Assembly (NCBI GenBank): GCA_977020255.1
Contig: CDROCS010003797.1
Location: 62,001 to 126,000 of the forward strand
DNA: 64,000 nt
Direction: 5' to 3'
From: Obrimoposthia wandeli
Lineage: Eukaryota
Shown here: positions 1 to 55,455 of the stretch, one piece after another
Layout of the letters: every line of letters starts with the position of its first letter
Numbering within the stretch: position 1 is the first letter of the stretch
The notes under the pieces: model-generated
What the model was told of the DNA's origin: nothing
Database searches by the model: none
Seen by the model: only the letters and a program-made list of their open reading frames with translations
Program-made: the position numbers and the translations under genes

Positions 1-1566
1 TTCTTTAAAACGCATTTGAAAACGTTCAAGAAAGTTAGCGTTTTCAGCGGTTAATGGTACATATTTCATGTGCGCTAAATGCGCCGGTAAAATCCACTTT
101 GACTCAATCAACGAAAAGACTAAACAAAAGCTCACCACGATTGAAATTGAGCGGAAGAAAGCGGCAAAGGTAGCATCTATAAACAATAACGGAGTAAAGG
201 CTGCGATGGTGGTTAGAACACCAAAAGTAGCGGGCATAGCAACGCGCATGGTGCCACTAATAATGTTATCGCGAGAATGACCATACTTTTCAATTTCAGC
301 ATAAGCACTTTCACCAATGACAATGGCGTCATCAACCACAATACCGAGCACCATGATAAACGCGAACAAACTTAACATGTTGATTGAGACTGACCATTCG
401 CCTAATAGTGGCATCATGAGCAAAGCACCAAAAAAACTGATTGGAATACCTAGCATCACCCAAAAAGCGATTTTTATTCTCAAAAATAAGGCTAACACGA
501 TAAAAACTAAGAACGCGCCCATCAGCATGTTATCAATCATCATATCTAAGCGTTCAGAAAGGTAATAAGAGCTATCGCCCCAAACCGTTAATTTGGCGCC
601 TTGAGGCAACTGATGATTTTTTTCATCAACATAATCTCTAACTTGTGCTGCAATTTCTAAATCGTTTTGATCACCCGTTGATTGCACCATAATACTGGAG
701 GTATTTTCATCATCGAAGGTGGCAAAATCGTCCTGCTCAACAAAACCATCGTTAATATTAGCGATGTCTGACAGTATTAAACGTGTACCATCAACATTAG
801 TACGCAACACTAAATCACCATAATCATGGCCTGTGTACGCTTGGCCTTCGGCGCGCAGTAAAATGTCACCACCACGAGTTTTTATCGTGCCGCCTGGCAT
901 GTCGACCGATGAACTTCTCACTGCTTGAGTAATTTCATCAAAGGTCAGTTGATACTGTTGTAGTTTTTCTTCTGATACTTCGATACTGATTTCATAATCA
1001 CGGCTACCGACTATTTCAGCACTGTTAACACTGGGCAACGCCATGATTTCATCACGGATATTTTGCGCCATCACCTGTCTAGCACGCCGCTCCATTGAGC
1101 CACTCACCGACAGCCACATCACCTGACCTTTAAATTCTTGTTTCGTGACGATAGGTTTTTCGGCTTGTTCAGGAAAGGTTGTGATCGCGTCAACTTGCAT
1201 TTGCACTTCATCAAGTTTTTCAGACATTGAATAGCCTGACTGTAACTCGATAGTGATAACACCAACACCTTCGCTAGCGGTTGCTGTAATGCGTTTGATA
1301 CCTTCAATATCTTCCAGTGACTCTTCAACTTTAAGAATAACTGATTGTTCGACTTCTTCTGGTGCCGCGCCCAAATGAGGCACCACAACCTGAATACTGT
1401 TGGCATTAAATTCAGGAAACATCTTTTTATTAATGCCCTGATAGGAGAAGTATCCTGACACTAAAATAAACACCATCAGCAAGTTTGCTGCGACACTATT
1501 GTGAGTAAACCAGGCAATAATGCCGGTGTGTTTTTTTTCTGGCTCAGTTTGAGAGAACTCGCTCAT
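1..1566 (-). CDS. RND efflux transporter permease subunit (AcrB/AcrD/AcrF family), 3' part outside window
   Basis: Manual translation from ATG at 1566 (overlapping the upstream stop, TAATG) is open to position 1: MSEFSQTEPEKKHTGIIAWFTHNSVAANLLMVFILVSG...VLGIVVDDAIVIGES. This includes the RND TM4 proton-relay DD motif. It is missing from the ORF track because no stop lies in the window. Confidence 0.9.
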   Translation of the reverse strand, partial: MSEFSQTEPEKKHTGIIAWFTHNSVAANLLMVFILVSGYFSYQGINKKMFPEFNANSIQVVVPHLGAAPEEVEQSVILKVEESLEDIEGIKRITATASEGVGVITIELQSGYSMSEKLDEVQMQVDAITTFPEQAEKPIVTKQEFKGQVMWLSVSGSMERRARQVMAQNIRDEIMALPSVNSAEIVGSRDYEISIEVSEEKLQQYQLTFDEITQAVRSSSVDMPGGTIKTRGGDILLRAEGQAYTGHDYGDLVLRTNVDGTRLILSDIANINDGFVEQDDFATFDDENTSSIMVQSTGDQNDLEIAAQVRDYVDEKNHQLPQGAKLTVWGDSSYYLSERLDMMIDNMLMGAFLVFIVLALFLRIKIAFWVMLGIPISFFGALLMMPLLGEWSVSINMLSLFAFIMVLGIVVDDAIVIGESAYAEIEKYGHSRDNIISGTMRVAMPATFGVLTTIAAFTPLLFIDATFAAFFRSISIVVSFCLVFSLIESKWILPAHLAHMKYVPLTAENANFLERFQMRFKE

Positions 1567-4735: not shown

Positions 4736-5536
4736 GTGCTAAAAGGAAATTACACTACGGTTATCTATTCCCTGCTTGTTCATGGCTTGTTATTTTTTAT
4801 CATATTTATCGCTCAGCCGAAAAAACAACTTTTAGTCAAGCCCGTAGCTAAAGTAGTTCCAATAAAAAGCTTTATCTATTATGCCCCAAAATTAACGGAG
4901 CCAGCAGCAACGGTTACTGATGAACTACAAGTAAAAGCCACTCCCCTTGCAAGCGCTGAAACAGAAAAGACTTTTGAGAAAAAACAGCAAGAGCAGCAAA
5001 AAAAACCTGACAATGATGCTAGAGAAGTTGTAAAACTGCCTGAATTATCAGCTGATAACAATAAATTAGATCATTCATCTAAAACAGTCATCAGCACTGT
5101 ACCAGCAGAAAAAAAATCGGTATTTTCACCACAACCACCTCCCCGACCAAAACCGATAAAAAGAAAACTGGATAGCTTGACACAGCTACAAAACCTACGC
5201 AGTAAGCTTAACCAAAGCGCAAGCAATAATGCTGATAATCCTTATCAACGGTATCAAGAACCCTCTGTTTTTAATGCTAATGTCAAATCAGTGCCTCACT
5301 CTACGCCATTGCGCGATGAAGAAAACGAACGAGAAAAGCGCACTAAAAACATGGGCGCAGGCATAGCAATCACTAAAGGTGAAGATGGCGGCTGTGAGAT
5401 CAAGCAAGATTTGAGTGTCTACGGGCTTAGCGAAGGCTCCTCTATTCAGAAATTTCGCTGTGGCGAGTCAAAGTTCGATAAAAGCTTTCGCGAGCATATG
5501 AAAAAAGTAAAGGTAAAGCTTGGGACAGCAAAGTAA
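4736..5536 (+). CDS. Hypothetical membrane-anchored protein with Pro/Lys/Glu-rich linker
   Basis: 266-aa ORF; N-terminal hydrophobic stretch (YSLLVHGLLFFIIFIA); low-complexity middle; C-terminal domain with two Cys. Confidence 0.6.
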   Translation: MLKGNYTTVIYSLLVHGLLFFIIFIAQPKKQLLVKPVAKVVPIKSFIYYAPKLTEPAATVTDELQVKATPLASAETEKTFEKKQQEQQKKPDNDAREVVKLPELSADNNKLDHSSKTVISTVPAEKKSVFSPQPPPRPKPIKRKLDSLTQLQNLRSKLNQSASNNADNPYQRYQEPSVFNANVKSVPHSTPLRDEENEREKRTKNMGAGIAITKGEDGGCEIKQDLSVYGLSEGSSIQKFRCGESKFDKSFREHMKKVKVKLGTAK

Positions 5537-5730
5537 GGCTATACCCCTTAGCTTTAAACTCACCGTTATCAGCTCCCATTTTTATTTCATGATTCATATG
5601 ACACCAACGAACGACCTATCAACGGTGCTTTGCACCAACCACAGGTTTACTCAGAACATTTCGATAGGCTTAAAGGCGACACTGGGTTTATTGCTGACAT
5701 AGCAAAGAGCGCGCACGGCCCTTATAAATA

Positions 5731-6142
5731 TATACCCAAGCCACTTGAAGATGCAGGATTGTGCAAGTCGAGAAAGGGTTAGCACCAAGGCATTGATTGA
5801 AGAAAATGGTTGTTCCATTGTCGAAATCAATAACGCCACAGATGACCCTTTATCGCCTTGCCCGAAGGGAGCTAAGCTAGAAAACCATCTCCGCGTTGCA
5901 TACACGGATGTATGTACTTAGCTTTTGTCTGGAGCAAAAAAGCTGTGCATACACGGATGTATGTACTTAGCTTTTGCCTGGAGCAAAAAAGCTGTGCAGC
6001 ACTTGATAAGGTTCCTACATGGATGTAGGACATTAGGGTAATGCAGGAGCAATTACCGAGAATAACCATTGTCTTCGTGCTGCGCCTTGACCTGATTTCC
6101 TAGCTTAGCGCTGAAACTGCATATTCAAGTGGTTTGGGTATA
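5731..6142. mobile_element. ERIC/MITE-like non-autonomous element, 412 bp
   Basis: 26-bp terminal inverted repeats: TATACCCAAGCCACTTGAAGATGCAG and CTGCATATTCAAGTGGTTTGGGTATA (2 mismatches). TATACCC...GGGTATA ends as in enterobacterial ERIC; extensive internal inverted repeats; no transposase; sits between convergent genes. Confidence 0.75.
5897..5998 (+). repeat. 49-bp tandem duplication (2 copies plus 4 nt) inside the MITE-like element
   Basis: TGCATACACGGATGTATGTACTTAGCTTTTG(T/C)CTGGAGCAAAAAAGCTG at 5897 and 5946, one mismatch (5928 T / 5977 C). Confidence 0.95.
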
Positions 6143-6195
6143 AGTGCGTACGCGTGATACCACTAACTGCTAGTAAACAACGTGTTAACTGCAAA

Positions 6196-8787
6196 TTAGG
6201 CTTCTACTTGTAGAATAACTTTATCCGCTTTACTGGTATAGCTGTCCATTTTATGAAAATTCAAATAACGGTAAGTATCAGCTGCAGTCGCATTAATTTG
6301 CGATGCATATTGCATGTACTCAGCAACTGAGGGTAATTTACCTAAAATAGCACCAACACCCGCTAACTCTGCTGACGTTAAGTAAACATTGGCACCATTG
6401 CCTAAACGGTTAGGGAAGTTACGTGTTGAAGTTGAAAGTACCGTAGATTTTTCAGCAACACGTGCTTGGTTGCCCATGCACAATGAACAACCCGGAGTTT
6501 CCATACGCGCACCGGCTTTGCCGTAAATGCTGTAATAGCCTTCAGCGGTTAATTGGTCTCGGTCCATTTTCGTTGGTGGCGCAACCCATAAACGGGTTGG
6601 TAAGGTTTTTCCGAAACTCTCAATCAATTTACCTGCCGCGCGAAAATGACCAATATTGGTCATACATGAGCCAATAAAGACTTCATCGATATCAACACCG
6701 GCAACTTCTGATAATAGTTTTGCGTCATCAGGATCGTTTGGGCAACAAACAATGGGCTCTTTAATATCAGCTAAATCAATGTCAATAATATAGGCGTATT
6801 CTGCATCTTCGTCGGCTGACATTAGAGATGGATTATCTAACCATGCTTGCATCCCTTTAATGCGACGGGTAATGGTGCGAACATCGCCATAACCTTCACT
6901 GATCATCCACTTCAACATGACAATATTAGAATTTAAGTATTCGGCAACAGCATCTTCTTCAAGTTTGATTGAACACCCCCCCGCAGAACGTTCAGCGGAA
7001 GCATCTGATAATTCAAAGGCTTGCTCAACGGTCAGACCTTTCAGGCCTTCAATTTCTAAAACTCGACCAGAAAACTCGTTGATTTTCCCTGCTTTTTCAA
7101 CCGTGAGTAAACCATTTTTAATACCGTAGTAAGGAATAGCATGTACCAAGTCACGCAAGGTGATACCCGGTTGCATCTCTCCTTTAAAGCGCACTAAAAC
7201 TGATTCAGGCATATCGAGTGGCATTACCCCTGTAGCTGCGGCAAAGGCAACTAAACCAGAGCCAGCAGGGAATGAAATACCTAAAGGGAAACGGGTATGT
7301 GAATCACCACCTGTGCCCACGGTATCAGGTAGTAACATGCGATTGAGCCACGAGTGAATAACTCCATCACCAGGGCGCAGTGAAACGCCGCCACGATTCA
7401 TCATAAAATCAGGCAAGGTGTGATGTGTTACAACATCAACAGGCTTAGGGTAAGCAGAAGTATGACAAAACGACTGCATGGTTAAATCAGCTGAAAAGCC
7501 TAAACAGGCTAAATCTTTCAATTCATCACGTGTCATCGGGCCGGTGGTATCTTGCGAGCCTACGGTGGTCATTTTAGGTTCACAGTATTGGCCAGGGCGA
7601 ATACCTGCAACGCCACATGCCTTACCCACCATTTTCTGCGCTAAAGTAAAACCTTTCGTTGAAGATGTGACTGCCGCTTGCTGTGCAAAAATACCCGGCA
7701 TAGGCATATCTAACGCTTCACAAGCTCGAGCTGTTAAGCCTCGGCCAATAATTAACGGAATACGACCGCCGGCACGCACTTCATCTAATAAGACAGCACT
7801 AAGCTTAAATTCAGCAATAACTTCTCCGGCTGAGTTTTTAACGACACCTTCATAGGGGTAGATATCAATAACATCACCCATATTCATTTTTTGTACGTCT
7901 AATTCAATCGGTAATGCACCAGAATCTTCCATGGTATTATAAAAAATAGGGGCAATTTTACCGCCTAAACATACACCGCCAGCACGTTTATTTGGGATAC
8001 AAGGAATATCATCACCCATAAACCATAACACAGAGTTAGTGGCTGATTTACGTGACGAGCCAGTGCCAACGACATCACCAACATAAGCTAATGGAATGCC
8101 ATCTTTCTGCATCTCGGCAAGCTGAGCAATCGGGCCAGTCACACCATCTTCATCAGGTGTGATACCTTCGCGCTCAATTTTAAGCATAGCTTTGGCGTGC
8201 AATGGAATATCTGGGCGAGACCAAGCATCAGGTGCAGGTGAGAGATCATCGGTGTTAGTTTCACCGGTAACTTTAAACACTTTTACGGTAATTTTTTCCG
8301 CTACTTTTTCTTTTGAGGTAAACCATTCGGCATCAGCCCAAGACTGCAATACTTGCTTCGCCGCCGCATTACCAGCTTGTGCTTTTTCTTGCACGTCATG
8401 GAAAGCATCAAACATTAATAAGGTATGCGATAAAGCTTTAGCGGCAGCAGCAGATAGCGCGTCGTTATCTAAAAGTTCGATCATAGGTTGAATGTTGTAA
8501 CCACCTAACATAGTACCCAGTAACTTCGTTGCTTGCTCTGGTGATAAAATGGGTGAAGTCGCTTCACCTTTAGTGACCGCGGCTAAAAACCCAGCTTTTA
8601 CATAAGCGGCGTCATCAACGCCAGCAGGTACACGATTAGTCAGTAAATCAATCAGGAATTCTTCTTCTCCTGCTGGAGGTGCTTTAATTAATTCTACCAA
8701 AGCCGCGGTTTGTTCTGAATCTAATGGCTTTGGTACAATACCTTCTGCGGCACGTTCGTCTACATGTTTACGATAATTTTGAAGCAT
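6196..8787 (-). CDS. acnB: Aconitate hydratase B / 2-methylisocitrate dehydratase, E. coli-type (~863 aa)
   Basis: [22 protein letters not shown] start, preceded by AGAGG SD; motifs [29 protein letters not shown]; Fe-S Cys in FIGSCMTN and PGCSLCMG. Confidence 0.97.
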
Positions 8788-9287
8788 AGTGTTCACCTCT
8801 AAGATAAGAGATAGTTAACCTTAATTTTTTATCTAGCTCCCTTTACTAAACGGGCGCTAATTAAGCTTGTTAAGTATCCGAGATTAAAAAAATTCACTAA
8901 GATTATACGACAACAAGTATATTAATTGCACTACAGCAACAATCATCAGTGTGTATTACTACTATGAATATATTTTATAGTTCTTTTAAATCAAAACATT
9001 ACATTTGTAGTAACTATTGACTCTACGACTAAATGATTAGAGCGAATCAGCAAGTTTATGTTTAAGATATTTCTTTGTCACAAACAACATAAGCATATAA
9101 TCGACTATTGTTAAGTCATGGCATATAACCAACATAACTATAGCTTCTGTTGGCTATATCCACCGTGAATAGTGTTTATTTTATCAAATGATTCATAGTC
9201 ACTAAAAAATCAGGTAAAATAGCACCAAAATATGTCCCAGCTAATGATCATGTTATTAGCAACTTATAGCTAGAGAGAGAATATCAA

Positions 9288-12727: not shown

Positions 12728-12773
12728 TATACCCAAGCCACTTGAAGATGCCGTTTCAAGTGGCTTGGGTATA
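12728..12773. repeat. 46-bp minimal copy (termini only) of the element at 5731-6142
   Basis: TATACCCAAGCCACTTGAA-GATGCCGT-TTCAAGTGGCTTGGGTATA: perfect 19-bp inverted repeat; first 24 nt identical to the left end of the 412-bp element. Confidence 0.9.
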
Positions 12774-12791: not shown

Positions 12792-12819
12792 AAAAAAGCC
12801 AGCATAGTCGCTGGCTTTT
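12792..12819 (-). terminator. Intrinsic terminator of lpdA
   Basis: AAAAAAGCCAGC-ATAGTC-GCTGGCTTTT hairpin with U-tract on the minus strand, about 45 bp after the lpdA stop. Confidence 0.85.
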
Positions 12820-12863
12820 CAATTAACTAATCGTGAACGTTAACATTTACATTCACACAAAAA

Positions 12864-54996: not shown

Positions 54997-55455
54997 TCAT
55001 AAAGATAAATCAAGTAAGCGATCAGTCAGCTCTATTTCGCCCGACTGAATTTTCGCAATGCCCTGCTGCATTTGTGTTTGCCAAGCATCTTCGCTCCAAA
55101 TTTCAAACTTTTTCAATTGACCGACCAACATCAAGTTTTTTCCCAACCCTGCATGTTGACGTAAAGGACCGTTAATTAATAACCGACCACTTTTATCAAT
55201 GTCACAATCTGAAGCATTACCTAACAATACTTGCTGCAATAGCCGCTCTTGTGGGTTCATACTCGACAAACCACAAAGCTTTAATTCTATTTCTTCCCAT
55301 TCGGGCAGTGGATATAACAATAAACACGGATGTTGAATATCTACCGTACAGACCATTTTTCCTTGGCAATCAGCAAATAGCTCTTCGCGATACCTTGTAG
55401 GTATCGTGATTCTATTTTTACTGTCGAGCGTAATTGCGCTAGTGCCTCTGTACAT
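54997..55455 (-). CDS. mraZ: Division/cell wall cluster transcriptional repressor MraZ
   Basis: LDSKNRITIP, DIDKSGRLLI, GQLKKFEIW; first gene of dcw. Confidence 0.97.
   Translation of the reverse strand: MYRGTSAITLDSKNRITIPTRYREELFADCQGKMVCTVDIQHPCLLLYPLPEWEEIELKLCGLSSMNPQERLLQQVLLGNASDCDIDKSGRLLINGPLRQHAGLGKNLMLVGQLKKFEIWSEDAWQTQMQQGIAKIQSGEIELTDRLLDLSL

What the first reader, a model, noticed from the sequence alone, without database searches (positions are those of the whole stretch)
5731..6142. MITE/ERIC-like element carrying a cassette of CsrA/RsmA-type GGA hairpins: a possible mobile CsrA sponge
Seen: 412 bp bounded by 26-bp inverted repeats (TATACCC...GGGTATA). On the + strand the core (5897-6060) holds 7 GGA triplets, 6 in small hairpin loops: CATACA-CGGA-TGTATG (5899, 5948), TTTTG(T/C)-CTGGA-GCAAAA (twice), TCCTACA-TGGA-TGTAGGA (6013-6030), and GGTAATGC-AGGA-GCAATTACC (6038-6058). 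Established: CsrA/RsmA binds GGA in hairpin loops, with E. coli SELEX consensus RUACARGGAUGU, and CsrB/RsmZ sRNAs titrate it with arrays of such hairpins. ATACACGGATGT and CTACATGGATGT differ from the consensus at only 1-2 positions. Inference: a non-autonomous mobile repeat may spread multivalent CsrA-binding modules into transcripts, as dispersed CsrB-like decoys or 3' UTR control elements. I do not know of a description of this combination but cannot check the literature.
Basis: partly seen in the sequence, partly recalled or inferred. Interest (0 to 1): 0.78.

Follow-up and report, generated by a model that had tools for sequence, protein, structure and literature searches.

The report
ERIC-type MITE carrying GGA-hairpin modules
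A 412-base mobile repeat related to the classic enterobacterial ERIC element sits between two genes of a Colwellia-like marine bacterium. It has picked up three tiny two-hairpin inserts whose loops look exactly like docking sites for the regulator CsrA, but nothing yet shows they are transcribed or bind it, and a similar idea is already in print for a related repeat.

Summary
The element at 5731-6142 has 26-nt inverted ends. It carries 7 GGA on the + strand, 6 of them in hairpin loops, and a 49-bp tandem duplication.

It is an ERIC-superfamily MITE. Its termini are homologous to those of Vibrio and E. coli ERIC copies, and more than 120 loci in marine Gammaproteobacteria carry them.

The common form is a 266-bp backbone. 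The window copy equals that backbone plus three nested 48-49-nt two-hairpin modules: m49 twice and m48 once. These modules are a real family. Stems covary and loops are conserved. In the genome sample all 15 lie inside ERIC-like elements, but a metagenome scan shows the family is far wider.

Hairpin 1 (ACAYGGAUGU) matches the CsrA/RsmE consensus, and the second GGA lies 25 nt away.

The sponge reading is untested and gets little support:
- no promoter or GacA box;
- no orientation bias relative to genes (15 sense, 15 antisense);
- inverted module pairs exist;
- here the GGA strand is antisense to acnB.

The closest known relative is TwoAYGGAY (RF01731), matched at 19.8 bits against a cut-off of 43. 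A 2026 preprint already proposes that family as mobile-like Csr/Rsm sponges.

This scan has flagged the same module type on other pieces of the same data set.

Verdict: new variant of a known kind, moderate interest.

The parts
5731..5756 (+). Left terminal inverted repeat (TATACCCAAGCCACTTGAAGATGCAG). The outer TA is probably the duplicated TA target.
   Evidence: homologous to ERIC termini
5757..5896 (+). Left arm of the 266-bp Colwellia-type backbone, including the local hairpin 5763-5861.
   Evidence: 96% identical to L064:4955-5220 and other 265-267-bp copies
5897..5945 (+). Module m49, copy a. Hairpin 5897-5916 has loop CGGA; hairpin 5920-5944 has loop CUGGA.
   Evidence: 56.9 bits
5946..5994 (+). 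Module m49, copy b. It is a tandem duplicate, 98% identical. The T-to-C change at 5977 turns a G.U into a G-C in hairpin 2.
   Evidence: 57.6 bits
5995..6011 (+). 17-nt backbone linker (TGCAGCACTTGATAAGG) that is present in all canonical copies.
6012..6059 (+). Module m48. Hairpin 6013-6030 has loop UGGA; hairpin 6037-6057 has loop AGGA.
   Evidence: 63.2 bits; homologues in L067, L023, L104, L103, L096
6060..6116 (+). Right arm of the backbone.
6117..6142 (-). Right terminal inverted repeat.
12728..12773 (.). 46-bp solo palindrome made of the two family termini with 8 nt between them. It is an internally deleted or minimal member of the same family.
   Evidence: the same class occurs in about 10 other loci
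4736..5536 (+). Upstream flanking ORF of 266 aa with no family match. Its 3' end is 195 nt from the element, and it is sense to the GGA strand.
6196..8796 (-). acnB (aconitate hydratase 2). Its stop is 54 nt from the right end, so its read-through RNA would carry UCC loops, not GGA loops.

Best explanation
SHOWN. The element is a non-autonomous MITE of the ERIC superfamily. It consists of a 266-bp Colwelliaceae-type backbone bounded by ERIC-homologous inverted ends and TA. Three 48-49-nt two-hairpin micro-modules are nested in that backbone: m49, tandemly duplicated, and m48. The modules belong to a widespread family with covarying stems and conserved loops (ACAYGGAUGU and GC-NGGA-GC, 25 nt apart).

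INFERRED. The loops are conserved because they dock a conserved GGA-reading RNA-binding protein, most likely CsrA/Rsm. Each module would offer one dual-site unit for one dimer. The effect would be exerted only where the GGA strand happens to be transcribed, that is in cis on the host transcript (stability or translation), with incidental titration of the protein. It would not act as a dedicated, promoter-driven sponge gene.

At this locus only read-through from the ORF at 4736-5536 would display GGA loops. acnB read-through would display the complement.

My confidence in the identity and anatomy is about 0.9. That the loops bind CsrA when transcribed: about 0.45. That this copy has a selected regulatory role: about 0.15.
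For: Anatomy.

Family and ERIC homology:
- More than 120 loci carry the terminus.
- A Vibrio 138-bp copy matches a 127-bp E. coli element over its full length at 74%.
- That E. coli element matches both ERIC primers at 17/22 and 18/22 (primers confirmed).
- Termini are aligned.

Modules:
- One m49 in the 315-bp class of Cognaticolwellia aestuarii.
- m48 in L067, L023, L104 and L103.
- A third type, m47, at another site in L084.
- 15 of 15 hits of the covariance model (CM) in 0.92 Mb lie inside ERIC-like elements.

Structure:
- 9 of 14 pairs have double-sided changes.
- On 93 distinct metagenome modules, 12 of 14 pairs do; 86% of cells are paired against 69% in shuffles and at most 42% when partners are slid.

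Loops: 15 of 16 loops in 8 lineages of the sample anchored on the inverted ends (TIR-anchored, so unbiased for loops) keep GGA.

CsrA fit:
- SELEX consensus RUACARGGAUGU, with ACA, GGA and GU conserved.
- Dual-site bridging over 10-63 nt, optimal above 18 nt (PMC7652899).
- Three perfect (A/U)CANGGANG(U/A) decamers.

Strand: weak G.U excess on the GGA strand, 31 against 14, p 0.016.
Against: - No sigma-70-like promoter and no GacA/UvrY box near the element.
- No Csr/Rsm Rfam match.
- GGA strand versus flanking genes: 15 tandem-sense against 15 tandem-antisense in metagenome loci. It is 6 against 2 in the small genome sample. The backbone is 7 against 6.
- No folding-energy asymmetry between strands over 96 modules.
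- Inverted module pairs occur within one element (L104, L129, L218).
- Stems of 6-8 bp are longer than the SELEX optimum of 4 or fewer.
- The nearest and probably stronger transcription unit, acnB, is antisense to the GGA strand.
- Reads were contigs only and show nothing about transcription.
- The loop conservation in the metagenome set is partly imposed by the search pattern.
Confidence: 0.45

Rival explanations
1. DNA-level selfish modules. The two hairpins are recognised as single-stranded DNA by a mobilising enzyme. Candidates are a REP/RAYT-type or IS200/IS605-type Y1 transposase, or the unknown ERIC mobiliser. The loops and the TAG/GTAG tag before hairpin 2 would be the recognition signals, and the likeness to CsrA sites would be coincidental.
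For: - No orientation bias relative to transcription.
- Inverted doublets and tandem arrays, as seen for REP/REPIN elements.
- Modules sit in apical loops of backbone hairpins. The m48 type is always inserted just 5' of GAATRAC.
- A conserved unpaired T.AG lies before hairpin 2, present in 60-78 of 93 modules. GTAG-tagged palindromes are a known REP hallmark (PMC3733652, listed but not read).
- TwoAYGGAY copies sit at fixed positions next to REP arrays in P. fluorescens.
Against: - No transposase or RAYT was found next to elements.
- The same loop decamer is kept across backbones from several genera and across GC contents of 0.32-0.67. That fits one universally conserved partner better than many co-evolving transposases.
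- Both loops contain GGA but have different closing pairs.
- There is a G.U excess on the GGA strand, although G.T is also tolerated in DNA.
Confidence: 0.25
2. The element is a dedicated mobile CsrA sponge: a CsrB-like decoy that spreads multivalent CsrA-binding cassettes and titrates CsrA globally.
For: - Six GGA loops in 164 nt, with three perfect high-affinity decamers.
- Tandem duplication suggests expandability.
- The repeat family is very abundant in the likely source sample: summed depth in the thousands against about 7-10 on the flanks.
- Module parts are present in contigs of a marine metatranscriptome.
- The same proposal has been made for TwoAYGGAY.
Against: - Most copies, the 266-bp class, carry no module.
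- Six to seven GGA is below the 9-25 of classical Csr sRNAs (PMC11882849).
- No promoter, GacA box or clear terminator.
- No orientation bias.
- Opposite-strand modules occur in one element.
- Metatranscriptome contigs cannot exclude DNA and give no strand.
Confidence: 0.12
3. Generic RNA-structure element. As reported for ERIC and REP, the stable hairpins act on co-transcribed mRNA as 3' stabilisers, terminators or RNase E entry sites, in either orientation. The GGA loops would have no specific partner.
For: - ERIC copies are co-transcribed and change mRNA stability through RNase E (De Gregorio 2005, as summarised in PMC3184786).
- The element lies in a convergent 3' intergenic region.
- Both strands fold with z about -9.5.
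- Two weak terminator-like sites lie inside the element.
Against: This does not explain why loops are conserved while stems drift. It also does not explain why both loops keep GGA in 15 of 16 independent cases.
Confidence: 0.15

Closest known systems
ERIC / IRU (enterobacterial repetitive intergenic consensus) MITE
   Same: - Homologous inverted ends (TATACCC-N5-ACTTGAAG-NTGCAG).
- TA at both termini.
- Intergenic, multi-copy, imperfect palindrome with no coding capacity.
- Intermediate 127-138-bp forms in Vibrio link the two (PMC3184786).
   Different: - The backbone is 266 bp, against 127 bp for ERIC.
- The ERIC central core (the primer region) is not conserved.
- The hosts are Colwelliaceae, Shewanella, Psychromonas and related marine bacteria.
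- This copy carries nested two-hairpin modules and reaches 412 bp.
TwoAYGGAY RNA motif (Rfam RF01731; Weinberg 2010; Li et al. 2026 preprint)
   Same: - Two consecutive hairpins; the first has a CAYGGAUG loop region and the second a GGA loop.
- Multi-copy, with mobile-element-like expansion, doublets and arrays.
- Proposed Csr/Rsm binding.
- The core aligns to m49b.
   Different: - It scores only 19.8 bits against a cut-off of 43.
- The basal stem and extensions are absent.
- The hairpin 2 loop is CUGGAG or CAGGAG rather than AYGGAY.
- It is a 48-nt unit nested inside another MITE rather than a stand-alone element of about 170 nt.
- 20 other loci with the module give no RF01731 hit.
CsrB/CsrC/RsmX/Y/Z and Pf1-3 sponge sRNAs
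   Same: Arrays of GGA motifs presented in hairpin loops, with spacing that suits CsrA dimers.
   Different: - No own promoter, GacA box or terminator, and no model match.
- 6-7 GGA, against 9-25 in the sponge sRNAs.
- The carrier is a transposable repeat found in either orientation.
REP / REPIN elements mobilised by RAYTs
   Same: Short hairpins with a conserved tag (TAG/GTAG), tandem arrays and inverted doublets, and an intergenic location.
   Different: - Two unlike hairpins in direct succession.
- AT-rich stems.
- Loops rather than stems are conserved.
- No RAYT was seen nearby.

Membership tests
MITE (generic) | Terminal inverted repeats | tested here: met
   26 nt, 92% complementary
MITE (generic) | Many dispersed copies, small size, no transposase | tested here: met
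Sizes run from 40 to 412 bp. Only short unsupported ORFs lie inside the element.
MITE (generic) | Target-site duplication | tested here: inconclusive
   Every copy begins TA-TACCC and ends GGGTA-TA. That fits a TA duplication, as reported for ERIC. No empty site was recovered.
ERIC / IRU | ERIC-type termini | tested here: met
   Termini align with E. coli and Vibrio copies
ERIC / IRU | About 127-bp unit with the conserved central core (ERIC1R/ERIC2 region) | tested here: not met
   The backbone is 266 bp. Only the termini of Vibrio-type copies match the window element. The core is present in the E. coli copy only.
TwoAYGGAY (RF01731) | Reaches the Rfam gathering score | tested here: not met
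   19.8 bits against 43, E 0.79 on 196 nt. No hit appeared in the 2-kb and 64-kb scans.
TwoAYGGAY (RF01731) | Two sequential hairpins with AYGGAY loops on a common basal stem | tested here: inconclusive
   Hairpin 1 fits (ACGGAU or AUGGAU). Hairpin 2 reads CUGGAG or CAGGAG. No basal stem encloses the pair.
Csr/Rsm sponge sRNA | Multiple GGA in hairpin loops | tested here: met
   6 loops in 164 nt
Csr/Rsm sponge sRNA | Own promoter with a GacA/UvrY box, and an intrinsic terminator | tested here: not met
   0 promoter-like sites in 5300-6500. No box lies within 5000-6500. Only two weak internal terminator-like sites were found.
Csr/Rsm sponge sRNA | Match to CsrB, CsrC or RsmX/Y/Z models | tested here: not met
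Csr/Rsm sponge sRNA | Binds and titrates CsrA; transcribed on the GGA strand | not testable with these tools
   Only assembled contigs of public runs were available, with no strand or end information

The most novel reading that the evidence does not exclude
A widespread family of about 48-nt two-hairpin 'CsrA-docking' micro-modules inserts into the apical loops of unrelated MITEs and expands in tandem. The ERIC-like elements here are one carrier; other repeat families in metagenomes are others. This would give marine bacteria a dispersed, copy-number-tunable buffer of CsrA binding sites, and would put CsrA control on whichever transcripts the carrier lands in.
Probability: 0.12. Interest if true: 0.8.

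Novelty: new variant of a known kind. Interest (0 to 1): 0.45.

Why it matters
If the modules really bind CsrA, mobile DNA would be a route by which post-transcriptional control sites are created, multiplied and moved. It would also be a source of CsrA titration outside the classical GacA-driven sRNAs.

Two results hold even without that function:
- The ERIC family extends well beyond enterobacteria, into 266-bp forms in Colwelliaceae, Shewanella and Psychromonas.
- A well-supported structured module with strong covariation is missing from Rfam and is only weakly similar to TwoAYGGAY.

The idea itself is no longer new, because it has been proposed for TwoAYGGAY. This scan has also met the same modules on other pieces of the same data set.

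Tried and rejected
- Rfam on the window at gathering score and at E-value up to 1 and up to 10: no Csr/Rsm family, only a sub-threshold TwoAYGGAY match.
- Rfam on 20 + 6 metagenome loci with modules: nothing relevant.
- Promoter and GacA-box scans: negative.
- Public reads: only contigs. They show the repeat is very abundant but say nothing about strand or transcription at this locus.
- Empty-site search through the exact AcnB sequence: not on record.
- Search for an autonomous partner next to single termini (L107, L058): only host genes and a HEPN protein, no transposase.
- Orientation tests of modules and backbone against flanking ORFs: no bias. ORF calling was crude.
- Strand asymmetry of folding energy: none. 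The G.U against A.C count gave a weak excess.
- The extra ACACGGATGT at 55324 lies inside a coding ORF without a hairpin and is a chance match.
- Rejected readings: structured housekeeping RNA (RNase P, tmRNA), group II intron remnant, integron attC. No model match and no fitting anatomy for any of them.
- Literature searches for CsrA together with MITE or repeat elements found no direct description.
- Wilson & Sharp 2006 is not held in the library.

Full report
**1. The observation**

The stretch 5731-6142 is bounded by 26-nt inverted repeats that are 92% complementary. The 19-nt terminus occurs four times in the window against 0.03 expected. Two of these bound the element. The other two form a 46-bp solo palindrome at 12728-12773.

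The core 5897-6060 has 7 GGA on the + strand and 1 on the - strand. Six GGA sit in the loops of the hairpins 5897-5916, 5920-5944, 5946-5965, 5969-5993, 6013-6030 and 6037-6057. The seventh is in a stem.

5897-5945 and 5946-5994 are a 49-bp tandem duplication.

The decamer (A/U)CANGGANG(U/A) occurs three times on the + strand of the element and never on the - strand. About 0.018 are expected per 412 nt. A fourth copy in the window, at 55324, lies inside an ORF without a hairpin and is chance.

**2. What the element is**

The hits were in Colwellia, Cognaticolwellia, Shewanella, Psychromonas, Psychrobium, Catenovulum, Vibrio, Aliivibrio, Photobacterium, Methylophaga and others, and many lay at contig ends.

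Paired termini define size classes:
- 40-57-bp solos;
- about 127-165-bp forms, in Vibrio and others;
- a dominant 264-269-bp class;
- a 314-317-bp class;
- the window's 412 bp.

A 138-bp Vibrio copy matches a 127-bp intergenic E. coli element over its full length at 74% identity. That E. coli element carries both ERIC-PCR primer sites at its centre, at 17/22 and 18/22. The primer sequences were confirmed in 257 papers.

The termini of the E. coli, Vibrio and window copies align as TATACCC-N5-ACTTGAAG-NTGCAG. ERIC is described as a MITE with inverted ends and TA at both termini (PMC3184786). All copies here start TA-TACCC and end GGGTA-TA.

The window element is therefore a member of an ERIC superfamily by its ends. 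It is not an ERIC in the strict sense, because the 127-bp unit and its central core are not conserved.

No transposase was found beside single termini.

**3. Anatomy of this copy**

Alignment with other Colwellia-type copies shows the following layout:
- backbone 5731-5896;
- m49 twice, at 5897-5994;
- 17 nt of backbone, at 5995-6011;
- m48, at 6012-6059;
- backbone 6060-6142.

The canonical 266-bp copies lack all three modules; L064 is 96% identical to the window backbone. The 315-bp class in Cognaticolwellia aestuarii (L041, L054, L090) and L040 has exactly one m49. L067 has m48 at the same site as in the window. L084 has a third module, m47, at another site.

m48-like modules also sit in diverged backbones: L023 (Psychrobium), L104, and L103 and L096.

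m49 and m48 are homologous, with about 31 of 48 positions identical and the same design: hairpin with ACAYGGAUGU, a TTAG spacer, then a hairpin with GC/UC-NGGA-GC.

**4. The modules are a real structured family**

On nine instances, 9 of 14 pairs show changes on both sides.

A covariance model, R1, found 15 modules in 0.92 Mb of sampled genome DNA. All of them lie inside ERIC-like elements.

In this sample, which was anchored on the inverted ends and so is unbiased for loops, 15 of 16 loops from eight lineages keep GGA while the stems diverge. The exception is hairpin 2 of L067, which reads AGGC.

Only about 13 of 126 sit in recognisable ERIC-type elements, and 71 with full flanks do not. The module family is therefore much wider than this MITE. 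It also occurs as tandem arrays (L133, L138) and as inverted pairs (L129, L218).

On 93 distinct modules, 12 of 14 pairs covary. 86% of cells are paired, against 69% in shuffles and at most 42% when partners are slid.

Some positions that the search pattern did not impose are also conserved: the G-C/C-G closing pairs of hairpin 2, the T.AG spacer, and a 3' G.

**5. Does it work as a CsrA sponge?**

In favour:
- The hairpin 1 loop region contains the three features that were invariant or nearly so in CsrA SELEX: ACA, GGA and GU.
- The two GGA of a module are 25 nt apart. That is inside the 10-63-nt bridging range and above the 18-nt optimum (PMC7652899).
- G.U pairs exceed A.C mismatches on the GGA strand, 31 against 14, p 0.016.
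- The + strand of the element folds about 9 kcal/mol better than the - strand.
- Csr systems with GGA-rich sRNAs exist in the related Pseudoalteromonas (PMC11882849).

Against:
- No promoter-like site and no GacA/UvrY box.
- No Csr/Rsm model match.
- Most copies carry no module.
- The GGA strand shows no orientation bias relative to neighbouring genes: 15 tandem-sense against 15 tandem-antisense. In the small genome sample it is 6 against 2. For the backbone it is 7 against 6.
- There is no folding-energy asymmetry over 96 modules.
- Some elements carry modules on both strands.
- At this locus the genes converge. The GGA strand is sense to an unannotatable 266-aa ORF 195 nt away. It is antisense to acnB, whose stop is only 54 nt away with no obvious terminator between.

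The public runs gave only assembled contigs. They show that the repeat is very abundant in the likely source sample, and that module parts occur in contigs of a marine metatranscriptome. They give no strand, ends or proof of RNA.

**6. Comparison with what is known**

The closest described RNA is TwoAYGGAY (RF01731). Its two core hairpins align with m49b, but the score is 19.8 bits against a cut-off of 43, and the basal stem is missing.

A 2026 preprint reports the following for TwoAYGGAY (10.64898/2026.09.22.753630):
- It is multi-copy in Pseudomonas, with medians of 11-23 and up to 202 copies.
- It forms doublets and is tied to REP arrays.
- Its loops have been proposed as Csr/Rsm sites.
- It may act as a multivalent sponge, with a mobile-element-like expansion.

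The concept thus has precedent. Three things are new here: the ERIC-type carrier, the nesting of 48-nt units in apical loops, and the breadth of the module family outside Rfam.

Earlier notes of this scan on other pieces of the same data set describe the same modules. I used them as leads and tested the TwoAYGGAY link myself.

**7. Verdict**

The CsrA-sponge reading is plausible biochemically but unsupported by context.

My best reading is a selfish ERIC-type MITE with nested protein-docking hairpin modules that act, if at all, in cis where the GGA strand is transcribed. The main rival is recognition of the hairpins at the DNA level by a mobilising enzyme.

This is a new variant of a known kind, of moderate interest.

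Noticed in passing
window:12728-12773: 46-bp solo palindrome made of the two family termini with 8 nt between, 91 nt downstream of the lpdA stop. A separate terminator-like hairpin lies at about 12793-12821. Similar 40-57-bp solos occur in about 10 other loci.
   Followed up: partly
window:9288-12083 (+): A second, divergent 931-aa AcnB-like paralogue lies head-to-head with canonical acnB (6196-8796, -). It scores 957 bits on NF006690 but only 376 bits on TIGR00117.
   Followed up: no
L133:1232-1328; L138:1523-1619: Tandem arrays of the two-hairpin module with a 48-49-nt period, in metagenome contigs without ERIC-type termini nearby.
   Followed up: partly
L104:383-428(-) and 455-502(+); L129:5671-5784; L218:2767-2952: Pairs of modules in opposite orientation within one element or locus. 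This resembles the divergent doublets reported for TwoAYGGAY.
   Followed up: partly
L190:1592-1690: Group II intron domain match (RF00029, 43.3 bits) about 1.2 kb from a module in a metagenome contig.
   Followed up: no
window:5736-5883 in run X3: Summed contig depth on the backbone is in the thousands, against about 7-10 on the unique flanks. The repeat family is extremely abundant in that sample, although other organisms' copies are summed in.
   Followed up: no
L107:4556-5050: A HEPN-domain ORF lies between two convergent family termini 3.3 kb apart in a Methylophagaceae MAG. No transposase is present.
   Followed up: partly
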